In this document: piece by piece, positions 6,643 to 64,000 of the stretch
How positions within the stretch are numbered: the first letter of the stretch is position 1
Layout of the letters: every line of letters begins with the position of its first letter
Assembly: GCA_051294905.1 (NCBI GenBank)
Contig: CM119378.1
Location: 20,212,001-20,276,000, forward strand
Direction of reading: 5' to 3'
Source of the DNA: Botryllus schlosseri
Lineage: Eukaryota
DNA: 64,000 nucleotides
Program-made: the position numbers and the translations under genes
Notes under the pieces: generated by a model
What the model saw: the letters and a program-made list of their open reading frames with translations, nothing else
The model's database searches: none
Told to the model about the DNA's origin: nothing

Positions 6643-7835
6643 GCCCAGAGCTTCATCACACGTATCTTGTGCTAGCTACAAACTGGACGATTGAGGGGGG
6701 GTCACTGCGAGCACAAGGTGGCGTTATGTACTATAGAAATCATCGTGGGAAATCCATTAAATATTATCAATATATGTGCACTAAGAAGAGATATATGAGT
6801 ATGTTATCACGTCGTTTGCAGTTGTACAAGACGCATTCAATCTGAAATTGTCATTAACGCACTCCCTATATGTTTAATGGCATGCCATCGAAGAGCTTCT
6901 TAGAAGTACAGAACTTCAATATACAATTGAATAGTATATTCATATTAAAATGAACCCGAATATTTTCCGCATGCAATTGCAATATTGAGTTTTCTTACCA
7001 ACTATTCACAATGTGTGCTTATATTAAAATTTGTATACATTACAACATCTGCTCATGATCAAGAGCGCAGTTGATAAACCTTGGCCAGGCTCAAATTGCT
7101 ACTCCACACTGGTAAAAAACCCTGAAGACTAAGCTAATTCATGCCCTGTTACACGGAGAGACCAATATAGCAGTCTGTGTTGCTACTCAAGTATATGCTA
7201 GTAGATGTAAATATCTACTCAATTACAAGTATATAGAAGTAGCAATGTCAAATACATTTCAACACTACTTTAAGTATAAAGATATATCTGAACAGTACTG
7301 AAATTAATAATTTCAAAGGAAGTGGATTTGGTTAATCGGTTACATCTTTTTAGCAGATAGTCTGAGGTTGCCACGTTCGGAATTGCTGGTGCATCTACAC
7401 GACTAACACAAAATGATCAATGACACAAGAAATTACGTGCAATTTTCGGAAAATATATATCCAGTTACCGTGATACCGGGGCTCTTTCGCCGACTTGTCA
7501 TGAAAATTTCACTCATCATAGTCATATAAGCATATTCCAAATCTAATTTACTTTTAACAGAGCACTCGAGTTTCGAGTAGGTCTGTCGTACTCGAAATAA
7601 AAACGTAAGTGTTTATGTTCTTACATTACTTCCATTTATACTTCTACTCAGTTTTTCCGGTAAAACTACTTTTTACATTTTGAAATCCAAACTATAAAAG
7701 TATGTACTTATGCCCAAGAAATGTTTCGTACAAGTAGAAGTAAACATAACCACTTGTGTAAGTAGCGCAAGTAGGAAAAAACTTACTTGATTACTCCGAA
7801 ATACTAGAAGTACTTCTTTACTGAAAACTCACTGA

Positions 7836-42505: not shown

Positions 42506-43231
42506 AAATATGTGTTCAATGCTCAAGTTCAAGAAAGCGTTATAAATATAATCGTGATTACCTTTCCATAACATCGAAATGGAAGATGCTACTTCGAGAA
42601 TTTGCTGTAAACGTAATTATAATCCCACGATGTTGTGTAGAAGTAATAGTAATCAAATCACAATGGATTACATCGATGCCGTAATCATCCTATGCGTTGC
42701 CACCGAGCAACAATGTATATGATGATAATAATAGTTTCCATCAATTGATTAATTAGGTGTATATGTTCTAATGAGTTAAGACCATATGTGTGAAATACCA
42801 CGCGTACCGCTCTCTTAAAATCATACTTCAAACTTTCAAACGCCGTAATGATTTCATATGTTAAGAGAGTGACAAAAGCAATGGCGAGCTTTGATTATAC
42901 AATACTGAAGGGCCTTAAGCGATACCATGAAGTATATCGCTATATCGCAAAATTATTTTGCGTCCATTAAAAAGATTAAAAAAAGGGAAAAGATGTTTAG
43001 ATCCGGAATACCCGTGAACCCGTTTCTCATTTCATGTATTTTATTATAAATTGTAAGGCATGAACCATATGCTGTTGTGATAAACTAAAACCTATATGTA
43101 ACTTTAAAAACCGAAAAATAAATTGGATGATTTTCCGGCATATTAACCTACCCATGGGAACACGCAGGATAAATATCTATTTAATCAATGGGTTTTTGTT
43201 TCGCGGAAGGATTGGTTTATCGTATTGAATT

Positions 43232-43534
43232 CAATTAAATAGTATATTCATATTGAAATGAACCCGAATATTTTCGGCTGACACTCGTCAGGGGTAATCG
43301 TCAGCAACTAGTAGAGAATTGGAAAGAACATTGTATATCAACAATCGTATCACAAAATATGACGTCACCAGCATGAAATTTCGAATGAGAGAGCGTACAT
43401 TGAACGATTGTTGTGATACGATTGTTGATATACAATGTTCTTTCTAATTCTCTACTAGTTGCTGACGATTACCCCTGACGAGTGTCAGCCGAAAATATTC
43501 GGGTTCATTTCAATATGAATATACTATTTAATTG
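43232..43534. repeat. Near-perfect long inverted repeat (124-bp arms, 55-bp spacer)
   Basis: 43232-43355 is the reverse complement of 43411-43534 with one mismatch. Confidence 0.95.
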
Positions 43535-43600
43535 TATATTGAAGTTCTGTACCTCCAAGAAGCTCTTCAAGTATTGAATTCAATTCAATTCTCTTCCCAG

Positions 43601-43746: not shown

Positions 43747-44574
43747 TCACTCGATGGCAATTGAATAATAATGGCTTAACTGAATTATAATATACTGAAG
43801 GAAAATTGCGTCGCAGTACAGAGGGGACATATGAATATCTCGGGTTATTTGCCACAAAATGTTTCGAACCGAAAGGCTGATCGGATTTTCCAAGTATAGC
43901 TTGAGCGCACAAAGGAACGCCTAGGGTGCTTTAAATGGCGCGGGAACACATCGGTATGAGCGTGGATATCTGGATATCTGGACAGCTGGTGCACTGTATA
44001 CGGGTACCAGTACCATTTAAATTTATCAAATTTTCCCGGATTAATTACCAAGTACAATATAAAAAATATATTTAATTTGAGTTGAGCCAAGCGCCGAATA
44101 CCGTTGGCTCTTGAGTTTTAAACCGGAAAGCAGGTGCAACAGGAGTCGGTGACTTAAATCACAATACACGCAACGTCGCAGGTACAGACGGTCTTCACCT
44201 AACTCGGCGTTTCCTAAACTTATCGCGGAACCAGGCAAGTACAATATTACAAGCACACAATATGATTTTATTTATTCCACGGAGAATAACGAGTGCAACT
44301 AGAACCGAGTGCAATGATGCTTACAAGTCTCGGCCTGATGATAAAATCACCGCAGCACCACGTTGACACGATTCACAACATCTCGAACAGCCGATCATCA
44401 TCCTGATCCACGTTTCAGACTCGGGGTTGCAGCTGGAAAAGCCGAGGAATAAATTAGCCGCGTCAAATCATATATATATCGCGAAAGAGCAAAAGGCGAA
44501 TAATGTACTACTACAAACCGTTTCCTGGTCTGATAGCAGACCGAATGTACCCGTGATCAGATCGGAACACAGCA

Positions 44575-44682
44575 ACTTGCCATTACCGAACGTCATCAGG
44601 AGCTATATCAGTAACGGAGGGATAAACCCTCTCCTTTTCTGTGGCGAAGCCGGCTATGCCAATAACCCGAAGGAGCAGTTGC
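44575..44682 (-). ncRNA. Candidate structured RNA motif 1 (copy A); homologues at 52169-52277 (+) and 61540-61645 (-)
   Basis: Closing stem GCAACU/AGUUGC, cUUCGg hairpin, AGG/CCU hairpin, long stem with G-U pairs, GGAG:CUCC pseudoknot, CUGAUGA. Expression unknown. Confidence 0.45.
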
Positions 44683-45059
44683 AATCTACTTCGATCTGCA
44701 CAGCGATCATAGTTAGCGTCGTCGAAAATAAGTATCAACCGGACATCCACCCGTAACACAAATAGCAGACAAACGTAACCAAAAGCACACAAAACACAAG
44801 AAATAAAACAACTTCGACGACGCGGCAATACAACATAAAGCTAAACAACACACTAATACCAATGGGGCATAACAAAGGAGGGGACAGATAAGCATTAAAA
44901 GACACCCACACACACGCCAACAACGATACAAAAAGGTGATTGAAAATCAGGCACTCTATACACACACGCGGGATACACTTGAAATGACATTTGAAATGTT
45001 GAAGAATCGACGACCCTACTATGGCGAAACTATTATTCAACGGCCCAGCGAGGGAGACT

Positions 45060-45720
45060 ATAAACTACACTTGTTGAAGAATGACCTATGTTGATCAACG
45101 AGACAAACGAGGATGAAACTATACGATTTTCGTGAAGAGGGTGAAACTATAATATTCGTTACTACGAGGCCGAAACTGATGGGAGATCTACAAATGTTGT
45201 AAAATGGAACATTTCAACGGTGGTGAAACAGTTGATGAACAAAACAACGATGAAACTACAATTTACGTCATGAGAGTGAAACTATATAATATTCGTTACA
45301 ACGAGGCCGAAACTGATGGGAGATCTACAAATGTTGTAAAATGGAACATTTCAACGATGGAACATTTCAACGAGGGTGAAACAGTTTATCAACGAAACAA
45401 CGAGGATGAAACTACAATTTTCGTTATGAGGGTGAAACTATGTTGTGAAATGGAACATTTCAACGGGGATGAAACCGGTAATCAACGAAACAACGAGGAT
45501 GAAACTACAATTTTGGTTAAAGAGAGTGAATAATGTTGTGAAATGAAACATTTCAACGAGGGTGAAACAGGTAATCAACGAAACAAAGATGAAACTACAA
45601 TTTTCGTTAAGAGGGTGAAACTAAAATCTTCGTGACGAGGGTTAAACTATAATAATCGACAATCAAACTTCATATATTGAAGAATCGACGATGTAACGTG
45701 GGTGGAATTATAATCGACGT
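45060..45720 (+). repeat. Degenerate ~93-bp tandem array inside repeat copy A
   Basis: Repeated AACGAGGATGAAACTACAATT and AACGAGGGTGAAAC blocks; same unit as 63140-64000. Confidence 0.88.
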
Positions 45721-46294
45721 TTTAGCAAGGGTGAAACTGGAATATACAGTTACGGATGTTGAAGGACCGACGATCCAACAACAGACGACCCAACAACAAG
45801 ACTGAAACAAAACATAGCGCTATGCACAAGCACCCAGATACCAACAGACGTACACATACCGAAAAATAGAACAAACACACAAATGAAGAGATCTGCAAAT
45901 GTTTTACTGACCAACAACCACCCGTTCACTTTGCACAAACCCATCTGGAACACGCTTACGATCACGAGGGAATCGACTTGTAATCGAAGGACACTCGCAC
46001 ACTACCCAAATCCAGCATGAACTATATGACAGATGAATCAAACATGACCTCCATAAGACGAGTGTGAGAGCAATGGCGACACTGCACTGATGTCGACACA
46101 AACTATGATCACTATGGCATCGTTCAACCCAACAGTCAGTCCCAAGAAACGATTCGTACTATCGCTGGTAAGCCACACCAAGAACTAGTTTTGACATAAA
46201 AATTTGAAACATCGATTTTTGTTGGAATTCGATCCGTTGATACAATTATGAAAAGCCGAATAGTGAAGCCAGAAACCAGTCCCGGAACACCAGA

Positions 46295-46415
46295 CGATGA
46301 CCGACGAACCATTTACCGCACTTCGTCAGGGGTTATAACGGTAAACGGCAGGGCGCCACCTCCCCTTTTCTGTCGCTTAGCCGGCGAAGCCAATAGCCCG
46401 AAAGGGTCGTTGCGA
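46295..46415 (-). ncRNA. Candidate structured RNA motif 2 (copy A); homologue at 50694-50810 (+)
   Basis: Same architecture as motif 1 with different stem sequences; GGGG:CCCC pseudoknot; CUGACGA or CUGAAGA. Confidence 0.45.
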
Positions 46416-49400
46416 TGTGCATAGAAAATACACACATCGGCGTCATTTCGTCTAGCATTCCTGACCAAACACGATTCATCAACGAACGAGGACAACTATA
46501 GCGTATAGCTCATCAGCGAAACAGCACAATTCACTAACACGACTATCTACGTTCCTACCACCGTGTTACCATTCTTTACCATGGAAGGTACTTAAACTTC
46601 CACGTCGGATTGGAGGCTTTACAGTCCACATACGCCAGAAATGAATGAGAACCGATCGCTATCTCTGCGCTAGTAATATCAAGCTGCGGTGAAAAAAGCC
46701 CTTTTTCTAAAGAAGTCAAGAAACTCTGATTGCTACCTTAATTGGTGACTGCCAATGATAACTCAGTTAGCAATTGTTATCTCGACAAAATCAGAGAAGG
46801 AGACTTTATGATCTAGGTTCCTCATCGCCACCCAATCAGCACTAGTGGTGTCTCGCAATATCATGGAACGGTGGTTCTCGACCTTTATGATATCGTGACA
46901 ATCTCTGACAAGGGAGCATGGTTTGCAGCACCCTAGTAGGCTGCTTGAAATGCAATGGGTGTGATATTTGGGGAGTAGATGACTAATATAATGATCTTAT
47001 ATCTCTGTAATATTTCTGTTCAGCCCAGATTTTCATGCTGTTGAGCAAAATATGTCATCACTTTCGGAAAAGCCCAAGTATCACGCACTGCAGGCGATGG
47101 ACAATGTTATGTCATCTGCTTCCCATTGATTTTAAGAATTCAGATGTCCTTTCAGGATACAATAAATACGGTGTTATCTGTAATTGAAGTAAAATGTGTG
47201 AGTAACATATTGGCACAGCATTTTTCTTAGTAATCCATATATTGGAACTGCAGTGAAATGCAGGTCATCGCAACATTTGCTATATTTATGGCACGTTTTT
47301 CTTCACTATTACCACTTTCTTGGCGCGGTCAAGCCAGAAAATAATTCATAATTGTATTGGTCTAAAACAGTGATTCATAACCGCCAGTCAGTGCCGAGTT
47401 TCCTGCCGGTCGGTCAAATATATTAAAATTTTATATATCAATTTCGAAATGCAATAAGTTGGACTGAAGCCCATTTATTAGAGAAATCAAACATGAAACT
47501 TTAAATTCAATCAGGCGTTTGCAACGTATTTTCAGTATGACGTCATAGTAGTTCATGATCTACATACTTGGATGTCGGTCACAAGCGTTGTAATACCGCA
47601 GTGGTTCTCAACCGGCGTGCCGCGGCACACTAGGGTGCCATTTATGTCTCGCAGGTGCCGCGAGCGTTTTTCTTTTTTAATTTTGAAATTATGCGCAAAA
47701 TAATTCTAGTCTATAGCTAACGATCAATAATCTAAATCGAGCTTGATGTGAAGTTTGTACATTTGGACAATTAAAAATTAATGTTGTGCCCTTAATCAAT
47801 AACCCCCTCGAATTCGCTTTACCGGACATACCGCGTGCCTTGAAGGCTGTATTCAGTTTTTCTATACATAACTAACCTACGGATAGATACCCAACACCCG
47901 CCATCACGCTTGCTTGCCGGGAGGAAATTACTGCTCAGCAATCTGAACGCAGCATTATTGCTAATCCCATAGCAAACCACCTGAACGCTCAAATTAAATA
48001 TAGTTGATCTTATTTGAAAGCTACTGTCGCACTGATTTCGAAAAGGGTGCCGCGAGGTCAAAAAGGTACTAGCGTCACAAGCGTTTTACTAAACCAGTGA
48101 CTCCCAAGCGCGGCTCCAAAGTAGCCTTTTTGCCGTTCTGATTGACATTCAAATATGCCACAAAAATATAATGGGCGGCACTTCTTGTTTGTTTCTAGGA
48201 ATAGTTACAGTCATTTATTGTATATACATGCTAAAATGACAGATATTAGCTATTTCTAAAGGCTGGTCATAGAACTTTATATATCGTCTCTGTGAAGAGT
48301 GAATTTCGACACTATTTTAGTATCATCAAAATAATTGCTCATAGTCAAGTATGAATTGCAATAATTCTACTATTACTGAGCGTATAATCCCCCGGAAACT
48401 TGTCCATTAAGTGCTGGAATGAATGAAAAGCTATCACGTAACGTCATAATAGTATGTTGTAGTGCGTATATCAGGGTACTTTTCAAAGACATGCTGCTGA
48501 GTGCATGGATGCGCTATAGGCTTCATCCCTAGCTGCGTGTTGCTTGGTAAAACAGCCATGTTTTTTTTTGCTTGCTTCGCTAGCAGGACGGCATCAGTGG
48601 AGTGTATGTATTCACTGCGTGATTTTTTCTCATAATGTCGACTCAAATTATAATGCATAAACACGGGGACCTGCTCGGTGCTCACCATAAACTAAAAATA
48701 CCAGTTCACGGCCGACTTCAGTAAATAAATATTTACTACTCCAAATCTCGCTGAAACGTAGGCCGTCAATCTCACCTATCATTGTCTGACATAACATCGT
48801 TTATGAATGAGGATGACCACTAATCAACTGCACTGCTTGCATTACTTTATGAATTGGGATTTGGAAACTTATGACGTAACAGATTAAAGCAGGAGTGTCA
48901 GGCTCAAATTGCGTCGCGGGCAAGATTCAAGCCTTCAAATCGCTCGCGGGCCGGACCAGTCGACTGATTCCAAATTGTTACCTCGTGCTCTTGCTTTTCA
49001 TTTGAATACCTTTGAACAGACAGAGGGATAATACGCGGATCATATGGATTTTAAAGTAGCAAGTCGCAACACTTTTATTCGCGAACAATGGAATTAGCAA
49101 AAGGCGATGATTGTCCGGTTGAATACAGCTATAACAGGGGCGTCAACGACGATGTAAGTTGGCATATTCTATGCTTCCTTTGATTTCGTTATAATCTGGC
49201 GCTAGCCTTGCATACGCTTCGCGACGAATACAAGATATTCAACTGGAAACGCGGACGCTGGAATTTGGTTTATTATTATTAAACCACGAGTCCGGTTTCT
49301 CTAACGTCTGGGGATCTATTGGGTCGGAAGTGACACAGCCGTACGACCATATATATTTCAATATGTGTCTGTGCAACTAATTTATTTCCATAAATTGCAT

Positions 49401-50492
49401 ATAACGGTTCCGCAATGGCGTTTTCGCTTCTGTCAATAACTACTTTTCGATCCATATTTCTATAAAACTCTGACCTTCGTGAGCACTTTTTGCCTTCTTG
49501 AAATTGTATGTCAATTTAACCTACTTGTTACGACATTATTTACTAATCGGCTTTATTTTGAACCTGGATTACTCACACGACGTACATAGGTTACTTAATC
49601 ACGGAATGTCAAAGTAACCGTACTTCCAGTTCACTTTACACAGTAGTTTCTGTCCACGCATCAACATAAACAATTAGATTTTATAGTATAAATTCGAAGG
49701 AACTTGCCGAGGACCGCTTAGAATTGCATCGTGGTTCGCATTTGGCCCGCGGGCCGCACAATGCCCAGATGTGGTGTAGAGCCAAACAAGAGAGGTCGAC
49801 CGGTTCAGTCATATTGTTATCTCATCGTTATGGACGATGTTGTCACGAGCCTCCATTGGTACCACCTCCTGATCTGATCGGTGGAGGAGGTGCACAGATT
49901 AAAAAATCTTAACAACATTCAAGAATAAAAAACTCATGCCAAGTGCTGCTATACAAACTAACCGACTGATTGGGCGTCTGGGACCCATATGCTGTGTACG
50001 CACGTTTGCCCGAGATTTGAGTATGCAACATAATACTTGCCCATGCGACTTTATAACCCCAACTTAAACTAGCCCACAGGCGCCGTTATGGCGTTGGTTG
50101 ATTTTTCTTAGTTGTTGCTGGCTTTCCAGTTCCCGCATCTTGCACTACGGAGCCGCGACTATGTTTCAATTTCGGAGAGTGCCACGTCAAAGAGGTTGAG
50201 AACCACTGTAGTAGAATTTCGTGAGACACCGCTAGAACCGTTTGGATGGCGATGTGGAGCCTTGATTGTATAATGTCCCCTGACATTTTCGAGATTACAA
50301 TTACCACCAGAGCCATTATAGGCAGTTAGGCACTGATCAATTGTGTTAGCAATCACAGTCTCTTGACTGGCTTATAGGAAGAGATTTCTTCGTCGCTGCT
50401 TAATAGTAGGCCTACTAGCGTAACGCGTTCATCTCTTGTGTAACTGGGCTGGGGAGCCTTGGAGCAGCTGCAAACTACTGAGAACCATATTT

Positions 50493-52430
50493 GGTAGACT
50501 ACGGTAACAAGGTTGTAGGGAAGTAGATATTTGTGCTATACATTGACGCTGTCTCGCTCATGTTCTCTGTTATAGTTATGCTTGATGGTCGATCAATCGC
50601 TACAGTACACAGTCAGCAATAAACGGACGACGTGTCTCTTGTCGTGTTTGGTTTGGAACCCTAAACATGACTTCGACGTGTGTATTTTATATGCACGTTG
50701 GAACGAACCCTTCGGGCTATTGGCTTCGCCGGCTAAGCGACAGAAAATGGGAGGTAATACCCTGCCGTTTACCGCTATAACCCCTGAAGAAGTGCGGTAA
50801 ATGGTTCGTTGGTCATCGTTTCGGGTTCCATGACTTGTTTTCGGCTATACTATTCGGCTTTTTCTAATTGAATCAACATTCGAATTTCAACAGAAACATT
50901 TCTTCAAAAATTTCAAGGCGAGTCGTTCTCGATGTGGCTTGTGTACCAGCGATGGTAAGAACTGTTTCTGGGAATTGATCGCGGGGTTAAACGATGACGG
51001 CGATCATAGTTCTTGTCGACATCAGTGTCGTATCGCTATCATCCTTGCACTTATTGTTGTGGACGGTATACGTTTGACCCTACTGCGTTGATAATATTTC
51101 TGAGAGGATTTTGATTGTGTACGAGTGTCGCTCTTCGATTTACAAATCCAATCCCCGTGTAATGATAAGTTCTTGAAAAGGGAGCGAGTCGCTGTTCGTT
51201 GATTCCAACATTTGTGTGATACCGGTGCATGATAGCGTGTTGGTCCGGTAATCTTTCTTCGTTGGTGTCATCGTACTTGGGCCCGCCCCTCATGCTTTGT
51301 AGCATTCATTGTATGTGTGTTGTGATTGCATGATTTACCTGAATGTCATTCTGTGTTGTGACCCCCTGCTTGGATTTAAAGAAGTTTTGTTTTGTTGTGT
51401 GGCCTGGGTGGATCGTCGATCCTTCAACATTTGTAGATATTATTTTGTAGATTTCTCCCGCGTGTGCGAGAGTGCGTGTGTCGGTATTTCAATTCTTTAT
51501 CGCAAAATGTTGTAGGTCCTTCTCAATTCTTGTAAATATCTCACCAAGCTTCTTACGCGTGTGGGCGAGGGTTGGGTTTTTAATCCTTCAGTTATAGTTG
51601 TTGATGTATGTCTGGGTCTTTCGTCCTGTTCATTACGTCTCGCGCATGTCCTCCTGTGCAGGTGTTTTTGTGGGTGTGTCTGTCCCTTGTTACTTTCGTC
51701 CGTTCGTCACGTTTTGTTATCGTTGGTGATGTATGTCTGTGTCCTACGTCCTGTTCATTTAAGTCTCGAGCACGTCCTATGTCTGTCTGTCACTTGTTAC
51801 TTTAGTCCGTTCCATTACGTTTCGTGTCCTTGTGTAGGTGCCTTTGTGTCTGTGTCTGTGTCTGTCCAATATTTTTTGTCCAGTCCGTTACGTCTCGTGT
51901 CCTCTATGCGTAGGTTTTTCCCTATTTCTTTGCTCTCGTCCGATATGCCGCGTGTTCCTTATCGGGCTCCGATCTCGCATGTTATTGCAGCATGGTCCCC
52001 GTATTTATTTCATTCTGTTTTCCATTCGACCTTGGTTTCTGTTCCATAAGTTTCCCCAACGTTTTGTCGTATCATATGTTCGGTGGATTCTTTTCATGTC
52101 CGGTTGATTCTTATTTTCGTTGTTTCTTCGGCACTAACTATGATCGCGGTGCAGATCAAAAGTAGATTGCAACTGATCCTTCGGGTTATTGGCGTAGCCG
52201 GCTTTGGCACAGAAAGGAGAGGTTTGCCCTGTCATTACTGATATAGCTCCTGATGAAGTTCGGTAATGGCAAGTTGCTCTTTACTGATCTGATCACGGTA
52301 CATTAGGTCAACTATCAGACTCGATACACGGTTTGTTTTGGAAACTTCGCCTTTGTTCTTCCGCGAATTCACCAACCGTCCTTTGGTTTGATACGGCTAA
52401 TCGATTCTTTGCTTTTGTAGCTGGACATCA
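50493..52430 (-). mobile_element. Unclassified dispersed repeat, copy B (inverted, lacks the 93-bp array)
   Basis: Reverse complement aligns to about 44440-44740 and 45755-46580; carries different internal repeats at about 51600-51900. Confidence 0.8.
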
Positions 52431-54519
52431 GAATGCGCTGATACCACCGATGCATTGGATCAAGTGAAGGTCGGCTAGTGCCAACCAAGGATCACCTGAT
52501 GGTCGTTTAGTGAATCATGCCCGCGAAGTAAGTGCGGTAATCCCCGCATACCGGATTTCATGTCGTCAGCGTGGGTTAGTTATACACGATTGTGTTGCCA
52601 TTTGCGCCGTAAACCCTGAACATCTGTTATCTCTTCTAGACAGACAGTCTGCGGAGTTCGTTGAAAGGTCATCCCGTCTCGAAGCCTAGGATTTGCCTAG
52701 GATAAATCCTATACTGACTTTCTATTTTGTGAAATTTCTGATCGCTCCGGGTTGTCGTTAACTTGGCCGATTGCATTTTCGCTCGTTGCTCGGCTCGCCA
52801 GCCTTCAGATGTGTCAAGACCAACCATTCCGTTAAACCAGCTGATTTAAATGTGGAATTACGTCGATGTTGTGAAAATGAGCCACTTCATTTGGAAAAAT
52901 CTCGTGTGTCAGTCCACAATCCAATCCGTTGTGATGAATTTCAACAGCTTGCCGTATACTTCTCTTGCTTTTATTGTACGCGTCTTTTACAATGCAATGA
53001 ATAATATGTTATTTTCGAGGTGATATATATATATAGGCTTGCTTGGTTCCAAGACGGAAAGTCGCTGGAAGGATTCAGTTGGTACATGGTGTGCCCTTGC
53101 TGGCGTTAAGTTCTCACTGTTCAATGTTCACAATTTCCCTTAAGCCTGGTTGCAGTGGCTTGTTACTGGAATCTTTAGAAAACGCAATAGAAGCGGCGGT
53201 GCCAGCAGTATTATGTACTCACCGACATTGAAAAAGTGTGCGACTCGCTATTAGTCAGCCGAATGCTCTATGGATAGTTGGTTATCTGAAATTAATTGAA
53301 CGGATTGTCGTCCACACGAGTCGGTGGATATAATTTAGGTAGCGATTTGTCGTCGTTCGCCCATATGAAATATTTCTCAGTATATAAGGCTCATTATAAC
53401 CTTTGAAACTGATGTGTCGCACTAGAATTTACTTATTGACATCGTAATCTACCAGTACACGGCATGTTCTAATCTGAAAAATGGACTCTGACTCTGACTC
53501 TAGTGGACTTGTAGCATACCACCTTTGAAACATTCTGTAATGAAGACATGAAATACATTTTCCGCTTTTAGAAGTAGTATTTATAATTCACTTTCGGTTA
53601 CCAGTATCATATACTTTTGAGTTCTAATTAATATCAGTTCTTTTATCTGGATAACATACGTGTTGAAGTATAAAAGCAAGTGTAGTAATGCTTTTAATTT
53701 GATTTGATAAAAGTTGCTGTAAAAATTGCCATGACAAATACAGAAAAGTTGCAAAATGTTGCACTATAAAATCCGTCCAAACACCTTAAAACATCATAGT
53801 AAATAGATTCTGACTATCTAGGAAGCTGATTGGCGGTATTGTCATAGTATTGTCGACTACAACTTCAATAAAACAAGAGGTTTGGCTATGTTAATAACGC
53901 AGAACAAAAATAAATCTTTTGCTATTAAATGACTTTGCTATACTAGTTTACAACAACGCAAGCTGTGAGCTTCGATCACTTCGTTTGCGGTCATATTATT
54001 TGTGAGAGAACAATGGAGGTTCAGTAAAACGCACGATCATTGAATGATTGGTCGCTCTCACGGGTTACATCAGCGTTTCGCTAACAATACGAGCATATGC
54101 AAGTTAGTGTGATTTTTATCGACCCCGATTACATGGTGACTTGAAATTGACTCGGGAATTTTGCTCCGAGTCATGAGTCAATCCACATTTCTGACACGCC
54201 GAGTCAAGGCAAGTCAACTCATTTTAGCAAAGTGACTCCAGTCAAGTCAAGTCATACGAAAAAGTAGACTCGAATCTTACTAGAGTCAAGTCATGACTGA
54301 AATCATCCCAACACTGGTATGCTGTAGTAATGAGTTGCATTTTCAGTGTATTTCAATGTATAGCACTTGCCAATTTGCGTCTATCAATGCTTAAATAAAT
54401 GATATAGCATCTATAGAAGTCTATGTGCAATTGTGCATGCTTTTGAATTAGGAAGTGTCTAGCCGTCCGGTACCGGACGAATAATATCCTCAGGCTATTC
54501 GTCCGGCGTAAGAACGCCC

Positions 54520-55640
54520 ACGCCCACACACACGCAACCCAATCCTAATCACACAGTGCAACCCCAACCCCACCACCTCCGCACCTCATCTTAGGGCACC
54601 CAATCCTAACCCCACACGTGCCGAAACCCCAATCGTAACCCCACGGTCCAACCCCACCAGCTGATCTTACGGCACCCCACATGCGCCAAAACCCCTGATC
54701 CTAACCCTACAGTCCAACCCCACCACCTTATCTTACGACACCCCAATCCTAACCCCACACGTGCAACCCAGAACCCACATCATCATCTTACGGCACCCCA
54801 ACCCTAACCCCACACGTGCAACCCAGAACCCACCACATCATCTTACGGCACCCTAACCCCACAGTGCAGCCCCAGCCCCACCACCTCATCTTGCGACACC
54901 CCAATCCTTACCCTACAGTCCAACCCCACCACCTTATCTTACGACATCCCAATCCTAACCCCACACCAGGGTTGTAATGACTCGAGTCACGATTTTCTGA
55001 TGACTCGACTTGACTCGAGTCATTTTTTCAAAATACGGAAATGACTCGACTCGAGTCAATCTGTGTATTGACTCGACTTGGTATCGAGTCATTGCGCATG
55101 ACTCGAAACAATTCATATGACTCGAGAATCAGACGGCCAACACCGGCATTTCATTGTATTTTCGAAGAATAGTAAATTAACTACAATATTGGGATTTCGT
55201 CTATTGGTACTGGTATTCAAAAATGCAACCAGAAACTGGTAAAAGTGAAGAAAATTAGTATATTATCAGTGCGAACCATTCGATATCACCAAACAGAGTA
55301 TTAAAAGTCGGTTTAACAAGCCTGTAGCTGGAAACTAAGCAGTCATCACAATGACTTGGACTCGGACTCGGACTCGAGTCATAATACCATGACTCGGACT
55401 CGACCCTCTGCTCGCTGACTTGGACTCGGACTTGACTCGGTGGTGAATTGAAAATGACTCGACTTGACTCGAGTCAAAAGTATAAAAGTGAGATTGACTT
55501 GTTACTTGGTTACAACCCTGCCCCACACGTGCAACCCGAACCCACCACCTCATCTTACGGCACCCCACGCGTGCCGAAACCACAATCCTAACCCAAACAC
55601 CTCATCTTACGACACATTACAGGCGCAACCCTAAATTGAT
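54520..55640. repeat. C-rich ~55-bp tandem array in the MULE left subterminal region, split by a hAT MITE
   Basis: Unit approximately CCCCAATCCTAACCCCACACGTGCAACCCAGAACCCACCACATCATCTTACGGCA; period 55 between 54741 and 54796; about 10 copies. Confidence 0.9.
54967..55520. mobile_element. hAT MITE, 554 bp (GACTCGAGTC family)
   Basis: TIR CAGGGTTGTAA; TSD CCCCACAC at 54959-54966 and 55521-55528. Confidence 0.93.
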
Positions 55641-57964: not shown

Positions 57965-59979
57965 CAGGGTTGTAATGACTCGAGTCATGACTCGACTCGA
58001 GTCAGACTCGAGTCACGATTTTTTTATGACTCGACTTGACTCGAGTCATTTTCTTGAAATGGGAAAATAACTCGACTCGACTCGAGTCAATATTTGGATT
58101 GACTCGACTTGTACTCGAGTCATTACGCATGACTCGACCCAAGTCATTGACTCGGCTTATTTTATATGACTTGAAGATGAAGAAATTTGCGAATCATAAT
58201 GGCTAGATCAACGCATCCGACGAATTCTGCCGACATCGCTATTTGTCACCACTGCTTTCGTTGCACTTGTCTGATATCAGATATGCCGCCGTAAAAACAA
58301 CAGAAAATGATACATAGTAGCAATGCATTGTACAAAATCGTCCAGTGATGAAGAGGTAATAGATCCTCAGCAATTAAAGTACTCAAGACTTTTCAATTAT
58401 ACAAGCAAACAATTGGATCAAAGTTCAATTAGAGCCAATGAAATGACTCAGATGGTGAAGAGACTGATAAGCTCATGAGTAGATTTGAAGGCGATGATTC
58501 TTTGCATTTTTGGGCGACTAGGAAGAATGAGTATTAAATGCTCTTCAGTGTGGTTCAAAAATGCTTGTCAATTCCTGCATCGAGTGCACTACTGGAGCGT
58601 GTATTCAGTAGATGTGGATTCATTCTACGGCCATGCCGCTTTAACATATTTGAGGATCTCCTTTCCACATTAGTATTTTTGAGGTGTAACTCATTGATTT
58701 GATCTGCTGTCTGTGAAAACACACAATGCCCCTCGTCCATTTGACGTTTTGTTAGGTATGTGCATTGTGCACGTGAGTAATAATGAATGGCTAATGTTGT
58801 GTGATGTTTGTACAATATGGCTGTTCTAAAATAACTTTTTTTTATTTTACTGGGTGGTTGCTTGATAAGATTGTTATGTTGCATAAGAGGAACACTGAAT
58901 CTGGCTTAATTTGAAAAAAGTGGAATCAATGATGTGAGAGGAGAATATTTTGGATTTGAAAATAAATGGAGTATTTTAGTGAGAAATTCTTTCATATAAT
59001 ATAATTACATAGTAGTAAGCCGACTATTTTTTCATATCCAAAACATTCTACTCTAATAACTTCACTTTTTCTAGTTGGAATTGAGTCAAATTTGCTATGA
59101 ATCATATTTTTACACAATGTAACAATATCATGAGATAGCCGGTAAAATTCGAAAATCTCTATTTGTAATTAGTCTAAAATTTTCTTTAATAGCATTGCTT
59201 TCTACTGGTTGGAATTGAGCCAAATTTGATTTTTTAGGCAATCTAGCAGTTTTAAGAAGTAGCCGGAAAATTTGAAAAAATGTTTTTGAACAGCCCCATT
59301 GTACAATTATTTCTCCAATGCTGTAACTGCGATGTAGTCTGTAATGCAATTGGGAAAACCTTTAGTATAATCAAAGGGTATCTGTTCTGTTGTCACTGCA
59401 CAATGCACATAGTTGCATGCACGCTTTTACAGCATGCTGGCCTGTTGTAAATACCTCTACATAAACATGCATCTATTGATTCTCTATCAACTAGTATCTT
59501 GACGTGAATTTGTTGGTTCTCTATCAGCTATTCGTGAACTATCGTCGATGTGTTCATAATAAAAACTGAATGCTTGTATTTGTGATGTATCAGACTGACA
59601 AGAGAGATATTCGATTTTAAGTTCTAAGATTAGTAAAGTTATCTTTAGCATCGGTAAATGAGGCCAGGACTTGTCCGTTATCTGCCTAAATAAACACGTG
59701 CCAAGACTCTGATAGGGACAAAATGAGCATGTTTCGCAAACAAGGAATTCGATATTACCCAAGCAGGATTGAAAACATGAGTTGAACATGACTTCAATAC
59801 TGTGACTTGGACTCGACTCGAGTCATAACACCATGACTCGGACTTGACCCTTTAAACGGTGACTTGGACTCGGACTCGAGTCTGTGATGAATTGAAAATG
59901 ACTCGACTCGACTCGAGTCAAAACCACAAAAGTATGATTGACTCGTGACTCGGAACCATGTGACTTGGTTACAACCCTG
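57965..59979 (+). mobile_element. Internally deleted hAT transposon, 2015 bp (GACTCGAGTC family)
   Basis: TIR CAGGGTTGTAA; TSD CTCTGAAG at 57957-57964 and 59980-59987; ends shared with 54967-55520. Confidence 0.95.
58451..58702 (+). pseudogene. hAT transposase C-terminal dimerisation domain remnant
   Basis: DDSLHFWATRKNEY*MLFSVVQKCLSIPASSALLERVFSRCGFILRP...LVFLRCN; LSIPASSA..ERVFS is the hAT dimerisation signature; one internal stop. Confidence 0.9.
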
Positions 59980-61859
59980 CTCTGAAGTTTGAAATGTAGC
60001 TCCGACATCCAAAAAAGTTGGGTACCACTGATAAAAAGCATTGGCTCTCAACCCTTTTCACCTTGCGGTGCTAAATCAGATGCATCATTAGTTTCATGCA
60101 CTCCGGAACTAGATCATCGTTATGAGGTTTCACCATTTCAAATAACAGTATAGAATAGATCCGAATCAGTTACAAAGTACAATAAAATATCTCTAATTTG
60201 AGTCGCGCTGAATAATGCTGGTTCTTCTTGAATTACACATCGTAAAGGAGGTGCAACATGATTTCAAATACATACGATCTTCACCTAACGCATTGTTTCT
60301 TAACCTTATCGCCAGCGCCCCCAAAGGGGCGATTCGAATTTAAGTAGGAGTTTACCCTCAGGGTCGATATGGGGGTGGGGTTCGAAGGGGTGGTATGGGG
60401 GAGCGCTGAAGAAAAATTGCGCCGCAGTAGAGGGTGCAGTAGCGACATGTGAATATCTCGGGTTATTTACCACAAAATGTTTCGAGCCGAAAGGCTGATC
60501 GGATTCCCAAATATAGCTTCAGCGCACAAATAAAATACCTAAGGTTCTTTACTGGCACGGGAACACATCGACACGAGCGTGGATACCTACGACAGCTGGA
60601 GAACTGCATACATGTACCAGTACCATTTATCAACTTTCCCCGGATCAATTACCAAGTACAATAAAATATATCGAATTTGAGTTGCGCTGAATACCGCTGG
60701 CTCTTCTTGAATAACAAACCGTAAAGCAGGTGCAACAGGAGTCGGTGACTTTACAATCACAATACGCAACAGCGTAGGTACAGACGATCTTCAACTAACT
60801 CAGTGTTTCCTAAACTTCTCGCCATCGCCCCCAAGGGGCTATTCGAATTTTGAATGGGCGGACACGCTCATGGCCGATATGTGGGGGGTCAGAGGGGCAG
60901 TGTGAGGGGGCGCTGAATAAAATGGCGTCACAGTAGAGACGTATGAATGTCTCGGGTTATTTGCAACAATGTTTCGAACCGAAAGGCTGATCCCATTTCC
61001 GAAGTATAGCTTTACACCACAAATAAAACAGCCGGGGTGCTTTGCTGGTGCTGGAACACAGACACGAGTGTGGATACTGATACGACATCATGGTGCACTG
61101 TATACATGTACCAGTGCCGCCATTTATCAACTTTCTCTCTCCTGACGTATCATCTTTATTGCCAGGCAAATACATCTCCCTCCTACCGTCTTTTTATCGC
61201 GAAACCAGGCACGTACAAAATTACAAGCACATAATATGATTCTATTTATTCCATGGCGAATAACGAGTGCAACTAGACCGAGGGGAACGATGCGTACACG
61301 TCTCGGCCTTATGATAAGTACCGCAAGACACCGTTCAGACGATTCACAACATCACGAACAACCGATCGTCATCTTCATCACGTTTCAGACTCGGGTTTGC
61401 AGCTGGAAAAGTCGAGGAATCAATTAGCTGCGTCAAATCATATACATATCGCGAAAGAGCAAAGGCGAATAATGTACTACTAGAAACGCGTTTCCTGGTC
61501 TGATAGCAGACCTAATGTACCCATGATCGGAACAGAGCAACTTGCCAATAACGAACGTCATCAGGAGCTATATAAGTAATGGAGGGATTAACCTCTCCTT
61601 CTGTGGCGAAGCCGGCTATGCCAATAACCCGAAGGAGCAGTTGCAATCTATTTCGATCCGCATAGCGATCATAGTTAGCGTCGTCGAGAATAAGTATCAA
61701 CCGGACATCCACCCGTAGCACAAATAGCAGACAAACGCAACCAAAGGCACACAAAACACAAGAAATAACACCCATTGGACGACGCGGCAATACAACATAA
61801 AGCTAAACACGCGATCCGCATAGCGATCATAGTTAGCGTCGTCGAGAATAAGTATCAAC

Positions 61860-63139: not shown

Positions 63140-64000
63140 AATCAACGAAACAACGGGGATGAAACTACAATTTCCGTTAAGAGGGTGAAACTACGTTGTG
63201 CAATGGAACATTCCAACGAGGGTGAAACAGGTAATCAACGAAACAACGGGGATGAAAGTAAAATTTTCGGTAAGAGGGTTAAATGTTGTGAAATGGAACC
63301 TTTCAACGAGGCTGAAACAGGTAATCAACGAAACAACGATGACACTACAATTGTCGTTAAGAGGGTGAAACTATGTTGTGCAATAGAACATGTCATCGAG
63401 GGTGAAACAGTCGATCAACGAAACAACGAGGAGGAAACTACAATTTTCGTTAAGAGGGTGAAACTATGTTGTGAAATGGAACCTTTCCAACGAGGGTGAA
63501 ACAGGTAATCAACGAAACAACGAGGATGAAACTAAAATTTTCGTTTAAGAGGGTGAAACTATGTTGTGAAATGGAACCTTTCAACGAGGGTGAAACAGAT
63601 AATCAACGAAACAACGAGGATGAAACTAAAATTTTCGTTTAAGAGGGTGAAACTATGTTGTGAAATGGAACATTTCAACGAGGGTGAAACAGATAAATCA
63701 ACGAAACAACGAGGATGAAACTAAAATTTTCGTTTAAGAGGGTGAAACTATGTTGTGAAATGGAACATTTCAACGAGGGTGAAACAGATAATCAACGAAA
63801 CAACGAGGATGATACTACAATTTTCGTTTAAGAGGGTGAAACTATGTTGTGAAATGGAACATTTCAACGAGGGTGAAACAGATAAATCAACGAAACAACG
63901 AGGATGAAACTACAATTTTCGTTAAGAGGGTGAAACTATGTTGTGAAATGGAACATTTCAACGAGGGTGAAACAGATAATCAACGAAACAACGAGGATGA
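63140..64000 (+). repeat. Satellite-like tandem array, 93-95-bp unit, at least 9 copies, open-ended
   Basis: Unit starts at 63601, 63696, 63790, 63885, 63978; each unit has three ~31-bp subunits carrying G(A/G)TGAAAC. Confidence 0.97.

What the first reader, a model, noticed from the sequence alone, without database searches (positions are those of the whole stretch)
44575..46415. Two diverged, directly repeated ~110-nt structured-RNA motifs bracket a non-coding repeat: candidate new ribozyme-like system
Seen: the element carries motif 1 (44575-44682, 52169-52277, 61540-61645) and motif 2 (46295-46415, 50694-50810), 1.5-1.7 kb apart on the same T/G-rich strand. Shared architecture: closing stem (GCAACU:AGUUGC versus AACGAA:UUCGUU), cUUCGg-type hairpin, two GGC-nnn-GCC-like hairpins, ACAGAA(A), an AGG:CCU hairpin, and a 10-12-bp stem whose loop reads UAUA(G/A)-C(U/C)CC-UGANGA-NGU. 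That loop can pair with the segment after ACAGAAA, with a compensatory change (GGAG:CUCC versus GGGG:CCCC). Stem irregularities in copies A and B are G-U pairs on this strand but A-C mismatches on the other, which favours RNA; the long stem is decayed in copy C. Known: CUGANGA and GAAA are hammerhead core boxes, and retrozymes and Penelope-like elements use paired ribozymes to excise unit-length or circular RNA. I could not fit canonical hammerhead, HDV or twister topology. Inference: an undescribed self-cleaving or processing RNA defining a mobile RNA unit.
Basis: partly seen in the sequence, partly recalled or inferred. Interest (0 to 1): 0.8.

Follow-up and report, generated by a model that had tools for sequence, protein, structure and literature searches.

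The report
Paired conserved RNA modules in repeat
A non-coding repeat in a sea-squirt genome carries two old, diverged copies of a ~110-base module that looks like a folded RNA matching no described RNA family. It could be a new self-cutting RNA, but nothing here shows that it cuts.

Summary
The window has five copies of one ~110-nt motif, in two paralogous types about 71% alike. m1 is at 44572-44682(-), 52169-52277(+) and 61537-61644(-). m2 is at 46303-46411(-) and 50702-50810(+). In copies A and B the order on the T/G-rich strand is m2, then 1.36-1.62 kb without an ORF, then m1.

The helices survive the m1/m2 split through compensatory and wobble changes. Wobble pairs are strand-specific (24 against 1). 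An 18-nt loop and an ACAGAA box hardly vary.

The motif cores are the best-kept, highest-depth part of the family. DNA word depth is 334-742 against a baseline of about 19. A-versus-B identity is 84-89% in the cores and 62-75% in the flanks.

No Rfam family matches, and hammerhead topology fails in every copy. The HDV-like active-site features were checked by eye and are missing.

- The repeat unit reaches about 500 nt beyond m2 and about 145 nt beyond m1.
- In copy B the unit lies inside a GT..AG intron (50512-52420) of a same-strand non-coding transcript.
- The pseudoknot strand also has a competing local partner.

Self-cleavage is untested, because only 13 raw RNA reads mapped. One contig from an RNA run joins an m1 5' part to an m2 body, in the order a circle or tandem junction would give.

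Verdict: a real, apparently undescribed structured-RNA module. A ribozyme role is possible at about 0.3.

The parts
46303..46411 (-). m2 core, copy A (closing stem to closing stem)
   Evidence: Pattern and covariance-model hits; stem coordinates.
44572..44682 (-). m1 core, copy A
   Evidence: best covariance-model score, 142 bits.
50702..50810 (+). m2 core, copy B
   Evidence: DNA word depth is 742 in this bin against a baseline of about 19. Joints in DNA contigs land at 50702 and 50810.
52169..52277 (+). m1 core, copy B
   Evidence: DNA word depth is 334 and 265 in the two bins that cover it. A DNA-contig joint lies at 52278.
61537..61644 (-). m1 core, copy C (decayed long stem)
   Evidence: It has 3 mismatches in the 10-bp stem. 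It is 92% identical to m1A, no better than its flanks.
44683..46302 (-). Interior of copy A. It is non-coding and includes a 93/137-nt tandem array at 45097-45653.
   Evidence: No biologically plausible ORF; TRF. The 218 nt next to m2 (46085-46302) are 75% identical to copy B.
50811..52168 (+). Interior of copy B. It is T/G-rich and non-coding. Only the first ~217 nt and short boxes align to copy A.
50172..50701 (+). Upstream part of the repeat unit in copy B, homologous to A 46908-46412. It holds the 5' splice site at 50511/50512.
   Evidence: Local alignment, 62% identity, spliced contig.
50512..52420 (+). GT..AG intron of a same-strand non-coding transcript. It contains m2, the interior and m1 of copy B. 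A/B homology ends at about 52423.
   Evidence: RNA-run contig joint 50509>52419, 'GT..AG cut +2'; sequence read. The splice-site motifs are kept in copy A.
44430..44571 (-). Downstream part of the repeat unit in copy A, homologous to B 52278-52423.
   Evidence: 68% identity.

Best explanation
m1 and m2 are two anciently duplicated copies of one structured-RNA module, about 110 nt in the core and about 220 nt with its extensions. The module is the cis-acting, selectively conserved part of a transcribed, non-coding, multi-copy repeat family in a sea-squirt genome.

Proposed fold on the T/G-rich strand:
- a closing stem;
- two small hairpins, C(UUCG)G and UUGGC-nnn-GCCGG;
- a single-stranded ACAGAA(AA) junction;
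- an AGG:CCU hairpin;
- a 10-12-bp stem capped by an almost invariant 18-nt loop.
The loop can pair back to the junction (AGGAG:CUCCU in m1, AGGGG:CCCCU in m2). That pairing would leave a GA-rich internal loop.

Shown: the copies, their conservation relative to flanks, structure-preserving substitutions, strand asymmetry, same-strand transcription, the intronic position of copy B, and the absence of any Rfam match.

Inferred mechanism, which I commit to as the single most likely at roughly 0.3: both modules process the primary transcript or excised intron at equivalent sites near the UUCG hairpin, just 3' of the closing-stem 5' strand. This would release a unit RNA of about 1.47 kb that can be joined head to tail. 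That is a retrozyme-like cycle using a non-hammerhead motif. Cleavage itself has not been observed.
For: Five copies, none expected by chance.

Core conservation. A-versus-B identity is 84-89% in the cores and 62-75% in the flanks. DNA word depth is 742 (m2) and 334/265 (m1) against about 19 for single-copy sequence and 20-120 for the rest of the unit. Rearrangement joints in DNA contigs land at 50702, 50810 and 52278, which are the ends of the closing stems.

Structure. 88.7% of cells are paired, and 3 pairs change on both sides. Only 2-3 of 500 shuffles reach the observed pairing and covariation. The long stem has a paired U/A insertion. There are 24 G-U pairs on the sense strand against 1 on the antisense strand. 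The ten m2A/m2B differences fall in a hairpin loop, at the N of UGANGA, in the closing stem, or change a wobble to a Watson-Crick pair.

Transcription. The stranded run X23 has 2 reads over m2 in the same orientation as the GT..AG-spliced transcript. Run X5 has contigs over both motifs and the interior.

Chimeric contig. An X5 contig runs from upstream of m1, through an m1-type GCAACTGCT, into an m2-type body from 50709. The crossover lies inside CCUUCGGG. Its depth is 6.5. No such joint is listed for the DNA run X2 (table 5c).

No Rfam family matches.

Copy C is no better conserved in the core than in its flanks, and its long stem is broken. This fits selection acting on propagating copies of a mobile family, not on each locus.
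Against: - No cleavage evidence. One search lists no places where many molecules begin or end, but only 13 raw reads mapped, so this is no real test.
- Folding energies are not better than shuffles. The pseudoknot duplex is only marginally better (p 0.03-0.36).
- Covariation comes from one m1/m2 split among five related sequences.
- The pseudoknot's 5' strand has a competing local partner.
- The repeat unit extends well beyond both motifs, so they are not its termini.
- The chimeric contig is a single record from a run whose library type is not on record. A genomic tandem junction or a gene-conversion patch would explain it equally well, and how far its m2-like part extends is unknown.
- No homologue was found outside this genome.
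Confidence: 0.35

Rival explanations
1. The module is a non-catalytic recognition module. It is a folded RNA bound by a protein, for example the reverse transcriptase or a packaging or transport factor of an autonomous partner element. It sits near both ends of a non-autonomous element, and no self-cleavage takes place.
For: All the structure and conservation evidence fits this reading equally well. The invariant loop, the ACAGAA box and the invariant UUGGC/GCCGG stem, which shows no covariation, point to sequence-specific recognition. GA-rich internal loops are typical protein-binding sites (general knowledge).
Against: No partner element carrying the motif was seen in the window. This reading does not explain the m1-5'/m2-3' chimeric contig unless that contig is a genomic tandem junction.
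Confidence: 0.3
2. The conservation acts on DNA. The module would be a promoter, a transposase or recombinase binding site, or a replication signal of a DNA transposon. The 'RNA helices' would be incidental short palindromes.
For: GCCGGC is a palindrome and the closing stem could be read as a short inverted repeat. Folding energies are not significant.
Against: - The strand asymmetry of wobble pairs (24 against 1) and the compensated indel in the long stem are not expected for duplex-DNA sites.
- No target-site duplication flanks the closing stems, and m1/m2 homology continues beyond them.
- The two modules are in direct, not inverted, orientation.
Confidence: 0.12
3. m1 and m2 are intron-encoded stable small RNAs of a new kind, trimmed out of a non-coding host transcript in the way snoRNAs are released from host genes.
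For: Copy B's motifs lie in a GT..AG intron of a non-coding spliced transcript in sense orientation. The flanking exonic sequence is poorly conserved and the cores are well conserved. Terminal stems bound the cores exactly.
Against: - Box C/D and H/ACA layouts are not met. UGAUGA lies in an internal loop, the CUGA is lost in m2, and no ACA tail is present (sequence).
- Dozens of copies exist, and individual copies decay, as copy C shows. That fits a mobile family better than host genes.
- Two modules share one intron.
Confidence: 0.1
4. It is a disguised member of a known ribozyme class. It could be an HDV-like fold, with a P1 formed by the 5' flank crossing the closing stem, or an aberrant hammerhead.
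For: CUGANGA and GAAA boxes are present, and N is the only variable base. In m1, the 5' flank CGAAGU pairs with GCUUCG just after the second hairpin. Copy B has CAAA(A)GU:GCUUUG, a compensatory G-C to A-U change. This gives the strand order P1-P2-P1'-P2'. From memory only, m1 shares GCCGGCU and UCGGUAAUGGC-AA with the HDV genomic ribozyme.
Against: - No hammerhead three-helix solution exists in any copy.
- No Rfam ribozyme model scores even at E<=10 on 181-191-nt queries.
- The hairpin next to the putative P1 has a 3-nt loop, so no L3/P1.1 can form.
- m2 has no unpaired C before the closing stem and no convincing P1.
Confidence: 0.05

Closest known systems
Retrozymes: plant LTR retrozymes with type III hammerheads, and animal non-LTR retrozymes or Penelope pLTRs with type I hammerheads (PMC4918200, PMC7229834, bioRxiv 10.64898/2026.07.22.740005)
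   Same: The element is non-coding, multi-copy and transcribed. It carries two directly repeated structured-RNA modules flanking a non-coding unit. One RNA contig shows the permuted junction (3' module 5' part joined to 5' module body) that a circle would give.
   Different: - The motif is not a hammerhead.
- The two modules are only 71% alike and stay distinct in copies A and B, unlike LTRs or tandem units.
- No purine tract precedes m1.
- The unit (1.47 kb between the proposed crossover points) is larger than animal retrozymes.
- The element lies in an intron.
- Cleavage and circles are not shown.
HDV-like ribozymes of retrotransposons such as R2, RTE and L1Tc (PMC3774820)
   Same: The context is a retroelement-like repeat. 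In m1 a 5'-flank helix crosses the closing stem, giving the P1/P2 order of a nested pseudoknot. A long variable stem sits in the P4 position, followed by C-A-A before the 3' closing strand.
   Different: No L3/P1.1 is possible. The first pair of the putative P1 is C-G, not G-U. m2 lacks both the P1 and the unpaired C. No Rfam HDV-family model matches.
Hammerhead ribozyme, including the pseudoknotted Penelope hammerheads noted elsewhere in this genome (earlier notes s1-231978, s1-270887)
   Same: It has a CUGANGA box with N variable, and a GAAA box. A helix is replaced by long-range pairing.
   Different: Helices I, II and III cannot be drawn around the boxes in any copy. CUGANGA sits in a hairpin loop. 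No UH site is in register.
snoRNA host genes with intron-encoded small RNAs
   Same: There is a non-coding spliced transcript with poorly conserved exons. Well-conserved ~110-nt stem-bounded modules lie in its intron in sense orientation.
   Different: There is no C/D or H/ACA box layout. Two modules share one intron. The family has many copies, and individual copies decay.

Membership tests
Hammerhead ribozyme | Conserved core boxes CUGANGA and GAAA | tested here: met
   CCUGANGA and ACAGAA(A) are present in all five copies; N is U, C or A.
Hammerhead ribozyme | Three helices (I, II, III) adjoining the boxes, with a UH cleavage site | tested here: not met
   A descriptor scan in any strand order (helix I >=3 bp, II >=2 bp, III >=3 bp) found zero solutions in each copy with flanks of about 75-80 nt.
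Hammerhead, twister, twister-sister, pistol, hatchet, hairpin, HDV, VS, hovlinc (Rfam models) | Score against the family covariance model | tested here: not met
   No hit at gathering score over the window. No ribozyme family appears at E<=10 over 9 kb or over 181- and 191-nt queries.
HDV-like ribozyme | Nested double pseudoknot (strand order P1-P2-P3-P1'-P4-P2') | tested here: inconclusive
   m1 has a 6-bp pairing between the 5' flank and the junction that crosses the closing stem, with one compensatory change between copies A and B. m2 has only a G-U-rich candidate 60 nt upstream. A full descriptor scan was either too lax or timed out.
HDV-like ribozyme | L3 loop forming P1.1, and an unpaired catalytic C in J4/2 | tested here: not met
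   The hairpin next to the putative P1 has a 3-nt loop (AUA, GUA or UUC). m1 has C-A before the 3' closing strand. In m2 the long stem abuts the closing stem with no unpaired C.
Retrozyme | Two direct repeats, each with a self-cleaving ribozyme, flanking a non-coding unit | tested here: inconclusive
   Direct repeats and a non-coding unit are present. The ribozyme nature is untested, and the repeat unit extends beyond both motifs.
Retrozyme | Unit-length circular RNA | tested here: inconclusive
   One RNA-run contig has the permuted m1-5'/m2-3' junction at depth 6.5 (table 5c). Raw reads were too few for a real test (13 laid).
LTR retrotransposon or TRIM | Near-identical LTRs at insertion, and a purine tract before the 3' LTR | tested here: not met
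   m1 and m2 are 71% alike in both A and B, while A and B are 84-89% alike. The sequence 5' of m1 is T-rich, not purine-rich.
Box C/D or H/ACA snoRNA | Box C near the 5' end and box D near the 3' end next to the terminal stem, or hairpin-hinge-hairpin-ACA | tested here: not met
   UGAUGA lies in the apical loop about 25 nt from the 3' end. The upstream CUGA is CCGU or CCGC in m2. No ACA tail is present. There is no Rfam snoRNA hit on the motif.
MITE or TIR transposon | Terminal inverted repeats flanked by a target-site duplication | tested here: not met
   The closing stems are only 6-8 bp, with no duplicated flank. m1/m2 homology continues outside them.
tRNA-derived SINE | Recognisable tRNA-like head | tested here: not met
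   ARAGORN finds no tRNA in 43000-64000.

The most novel reading that the evidence does not exclude
The module is a new class of self-cleaving ribozyme used in pairs. m2 and m1 each fold through their own, mutually incompatible closing stems (AACGAA:UUCGUU versus GCAACU:AGUUGC). Each cuts near the UUCG hairpin, just 3' of the closing-stem 5' strand. The ~1.47-kb product is then ligated into a circle. The chimeric motif in that circle (m1 5' strand plus m2 body) cannot close its stem, so it cannot re-cleave. That would be a built-in way to make a stable circular RNA from an intron-resident mobile element.
Probability: 0.2. Interest if true: 0.85.

Novelty: new variant of a known kind. Interest (0 to 1): 0.5.

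Why it matters
If the module cleaves, it would add a ribozyme class found in an animal genome. It would also extend the retrozyme idea of paired ribozymes releasing a unit RNA beyond hammerheads. The simple design in which the two modules differ would then have a functional reason.

If it does not cleave, it is still a strongly selected RNA structure matching no Rfam family that marks a non-coding repeat family. That family also seeds a 94-nt satellite in the same window. It would then be a handle for finding the protein or partner element that recognises it.

Either way the test is cheap: transcribe two ~200-nt fragments and look for cleavage.

Tried and rejected
- Rfam at gathering score and at E<=10 over the whole window, over 9 kb and over two short queries gave only junk.
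- Exact-pattern scans of metagenome, viral and prokaryote genome contigs with three degenerate motif patterns gave 0 hits. The alignment therefore could not be enlarged.
- A covariance model built from the five copies, run without filters over the window, found no diverged extra copy.
- A hammerhead descriptor allowing any strand order found no solution.
- The first HDV-like descriptor was too lax and gave hundreds of junk solutions. The HDV question was settled by hand instead.
- MFE z-scores on both strands were uninformative.
- Duplex energy of the loop with the junction was only marginally better than shuffles.
- ARAGORN found no tRNA.
- Translation of the spliced transcript gave no long ORF.
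- The earlier-findings index searched by sequence was blank.
- Paper searches found no description of such a motif in ascidians.
- An apparent second m1-type breakpoint (an X5 loose end at 51027 containing GCAACTGCTC) is ordinary family interior, homologous to copy A. I dropped it.
- I compared the motif from memory with twister, hairpin loop B, K-turn and C'/D' K-loop, U6/U6atac boxes, TPP riboswitch, 7SL Alu domain, 5S, vault and Y RNA. None holds in both m1 and m2.

Full report
**What is there.** The window is eukaryotic, about 40% G+C, and earlier notes of this scan call the genome a sea squirt. It holds five copies of one motif. Two degenerate patterns of 24-25 nt each hit exactly five places, with none expected by chance. 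A covariance model built from the five finds them at 122-142 bits, and the next hit scores 11 bits.

Measured from closing stem to closing stem, the cores are:
- m1A 44572-44682(-)
- m1B 52169-52277(+)
- m1C 61537-61644(-)
- m2A 46303-46411(-)
- m2B 50702-50810(+)

m1 and m2 are 71% identical. Copies A and B are inverted relative to each other. On the T/G-rich strand both read m2, then 1.36-1.62 kb, then m1. No biologically plausible ORF lies in the interior, and no tRNA is found in 43000-64000. Copy C runs off the window end into a 94-nt satellite.

**Structure.**
- The closing stem is GCAACU:AGUUGC in m1 and AACGAA:UUCGUU in m2. One aligned pair changes from U-A to G-C.
- There is a C(UUCG)G hairpin and an invariant UUGGC-nnn-GCCGG hairpin.
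- There is an AGG:CCU hairpin.
- The long stem is 10 bp in m1 and 12 bp in m2. It differs by a paired U/A insertion, by U-G changed to C-G, and by A-U changed to U-G or C-G.
- Its 18-nt loop (UAUA-R-C-Y-CC-UGA-N-GA-M-GU) and the ACAGAA box are nearly invariant.
- The loop can pair with the junction, AGGAG:CUCCU in m1 and AGGGG:CCCCU in m2.

On the five-sequence alignment 88.7% of cells are paired. Three pairs change on both sides. Only 2-3 of 500 shuffles reach the observed pairing or covariation, and sliding the partners destroys the signal. Wobble pairs are strand-specific, 24 G-U on this strand against 1 on the other, from about eight independent positions. The ten differences between m2A and m2B fall in a hairpin loop, at the N of UGANGA, in the closing stem, or turn a wobble pair into a Watson-Crick pair.

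There are limits to this evidence.
- All double changes reflect one m1/m2 split.
- Folding energies are no better than shuffles (z from -1.2 to +0.6).
- The loop-junction duplex is only marginally better than shuffles.
- The GGAG/GGGG strand also has a local partner that co-varies, so the pseudoknot is plausible but not established.

**Conservation and copy number.** Between A and B the cores are 84-89% identical, while the flanks and alignable interior are 62-75%. I laid the contigs of a DNA run of the same species on copy B at 85% likeness or better. Word depth is about 19 over single-copy sequence and 20-120 over most of the unit. It is 742 over m2 and 334/265 over m1. Joints in those DNA contigs land at 50702, 50810 and 52278, which are the ends of the closing stems. 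So the stem-bounded core is the part the family keeps.

Between the younger pair A and C the core (92%) is no better kept than its flanks (88-92%), and copy C's long stem is broken. This is the pattern of a mobile family in which only copies with an intact module propagate. It is not the pattern of a host gene selected at each locus.

- Homology between m1 and m2 extends about 45 nt 5' and about 60 nt 3' of the core.
- A and B remain alignable from B 50172 (A 46908) to B ~52423 (A ~44430). The motifs therefore sit inside a unit of at least 2.25 kb and do not bracket it.
- Run X5 shows GT..AG joints that the RNA run X23 also shows, so I take it to be RNA-derived. One X5 contig splices 50511 to 52421. 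The intron 50512-52420 therefore contains m2, the interior and m1 of copy B.
- A/B homology stops within 3 nt of that 3' splice site, and both splice motifs are kept in copy A.
- The spliced transcript has no long ORF.
- The stranded run X23 has two reads over m2 in the same orientation as the spliced reads.

**Is it a ribozyme?** No Rfam family matches at any threshold tried.

The hammerhead boxes are real, and N is the only variable base in CUGANGA. But no arrangement of helices I-III exists in any copy.

An HDV-like reading was tempting. In m1 the 5' flank CGAAGU pairs with GCUUCG just after the second hairpin and crosses the closing stem. Copy B carries a compensatory G-C to A-U change. 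From memory, m1 also shares two strings with the HDV genomic ribozyme. However:
- the adjoining hairpin has a 3-nt loop, so no L3/P1.1 can form;
- m2 has no unpaired C before its closing strand;
- m2 has no convincing P1.
So membership fails.

Read ends could not test cleavage. Only 13 raw RNA reads mapped, and a second RNA run gave none.

One positive hint remains. An X5 contig runs from the sequence upstream of m1, through an m1-type GCAACTGCT, into an m2-type motif body from 50709. Its depth is 6.5, and no such joint is listed for the DNA run (table 5c). This is the permuted junction expected if both motifs are cut at the same place, within CCUUCGGG, and the unit is joined head to tail. A genomic tandem junction or a gene-conversion patch would look the same, and contigs cannot show absence.

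**Verdict.** The best-supported statement is that this is a selected, strand-specific, apparently undescribed structured-RNA module. It is present as two old paralogues in a transcribed, non-coding, multi-copy repeat.

I rate an RNA-level function at about 0.7. The specific retrozyme-like cleave-and-join mechanism I rate at about 0.3. The main rival is a non-catalytic protein-recognition module, also at about 0.3.

No homologue was found outside this genome, and no paper describing the motif was found. A 2026 preprint reports about 150 new ribozyme classes, which lowers the surprise of any single new class. The decisive experiments are simple and are listed under next steps.

Noticed in passing
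window 63140-64000 (and 45097-45653): There is a 94-nt tandem array of 9.2 copies, 91% matching, that runs off the window end in copy C. The same monomer occurs as about 3 copies inside copy A's interior. The repeat family appears to seed a satellite. An earlier first-reader note (s1-262685) says the same.
   Followed up: partly
window 52421-52574, 52644-52890 (+): These are exons of a spliced non-coding transcript. The second intron is 52575-52643, with an alternative acceptor at 52639/52640. RNA reads and contigs support it. No long ORF is present.
   Followed up: partly
window 46758-46830 (-): There is a weak box C/D snoRNA-like match (SNORD26 model, 21 bits, E 0.79, far below gathering score). 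It lies in the conserved upstream block of copy A. The boxes are degenerate in copy B, so it is probably chance.
   Followed up: partly
window 43229-43537: There is an almost perfect inverted repeat, with 127-nt arms, 98% complementary and 55 nt apart. It is a foldback or MITE-like element just outside copy A. A related 78-nt piece lies at 6890-6967.
   Followed up: no
window 54609-54966 and 55515-55582: There is a C-rich tandem array with periods of 48, 55 and 66 nt (CCCCA/CCCTAA-like units) and strongly negative GC skew.
   Followed up: no
window 54979-55057 and 58005-58083: Two 79-nt copies, 87% alike, are built from GACTCGAGTC palindromes 3 kb apart.
   Followed up: no
window 44990-45016, 45678-45700, 45756-45796; 51392-51478: A short box (TCGTCGATYCTTCAACA on the RNA strand) recurs at the edges of copy A's tandem array and once in copy B's interior. 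It is the only interior sequence shared by A and B besides the block next to m2.
   Followed up: no
window 50144-50254: A further conserved block sits at the start of the A/B homology. DNA word depth is 272 against a baseline of about 19. Other genomic copies continue upstream of it, so the true 5' end of the family unit lies further out.
   Followed up: no
The look-up of sequencing runs: Runs labelled with two other organisms, and one seawater metagenome, hold a few exact 31-mers of the 390-nt m2 region (share 0.09-0.12). The core may be conserved in related species.
   Followed up: no
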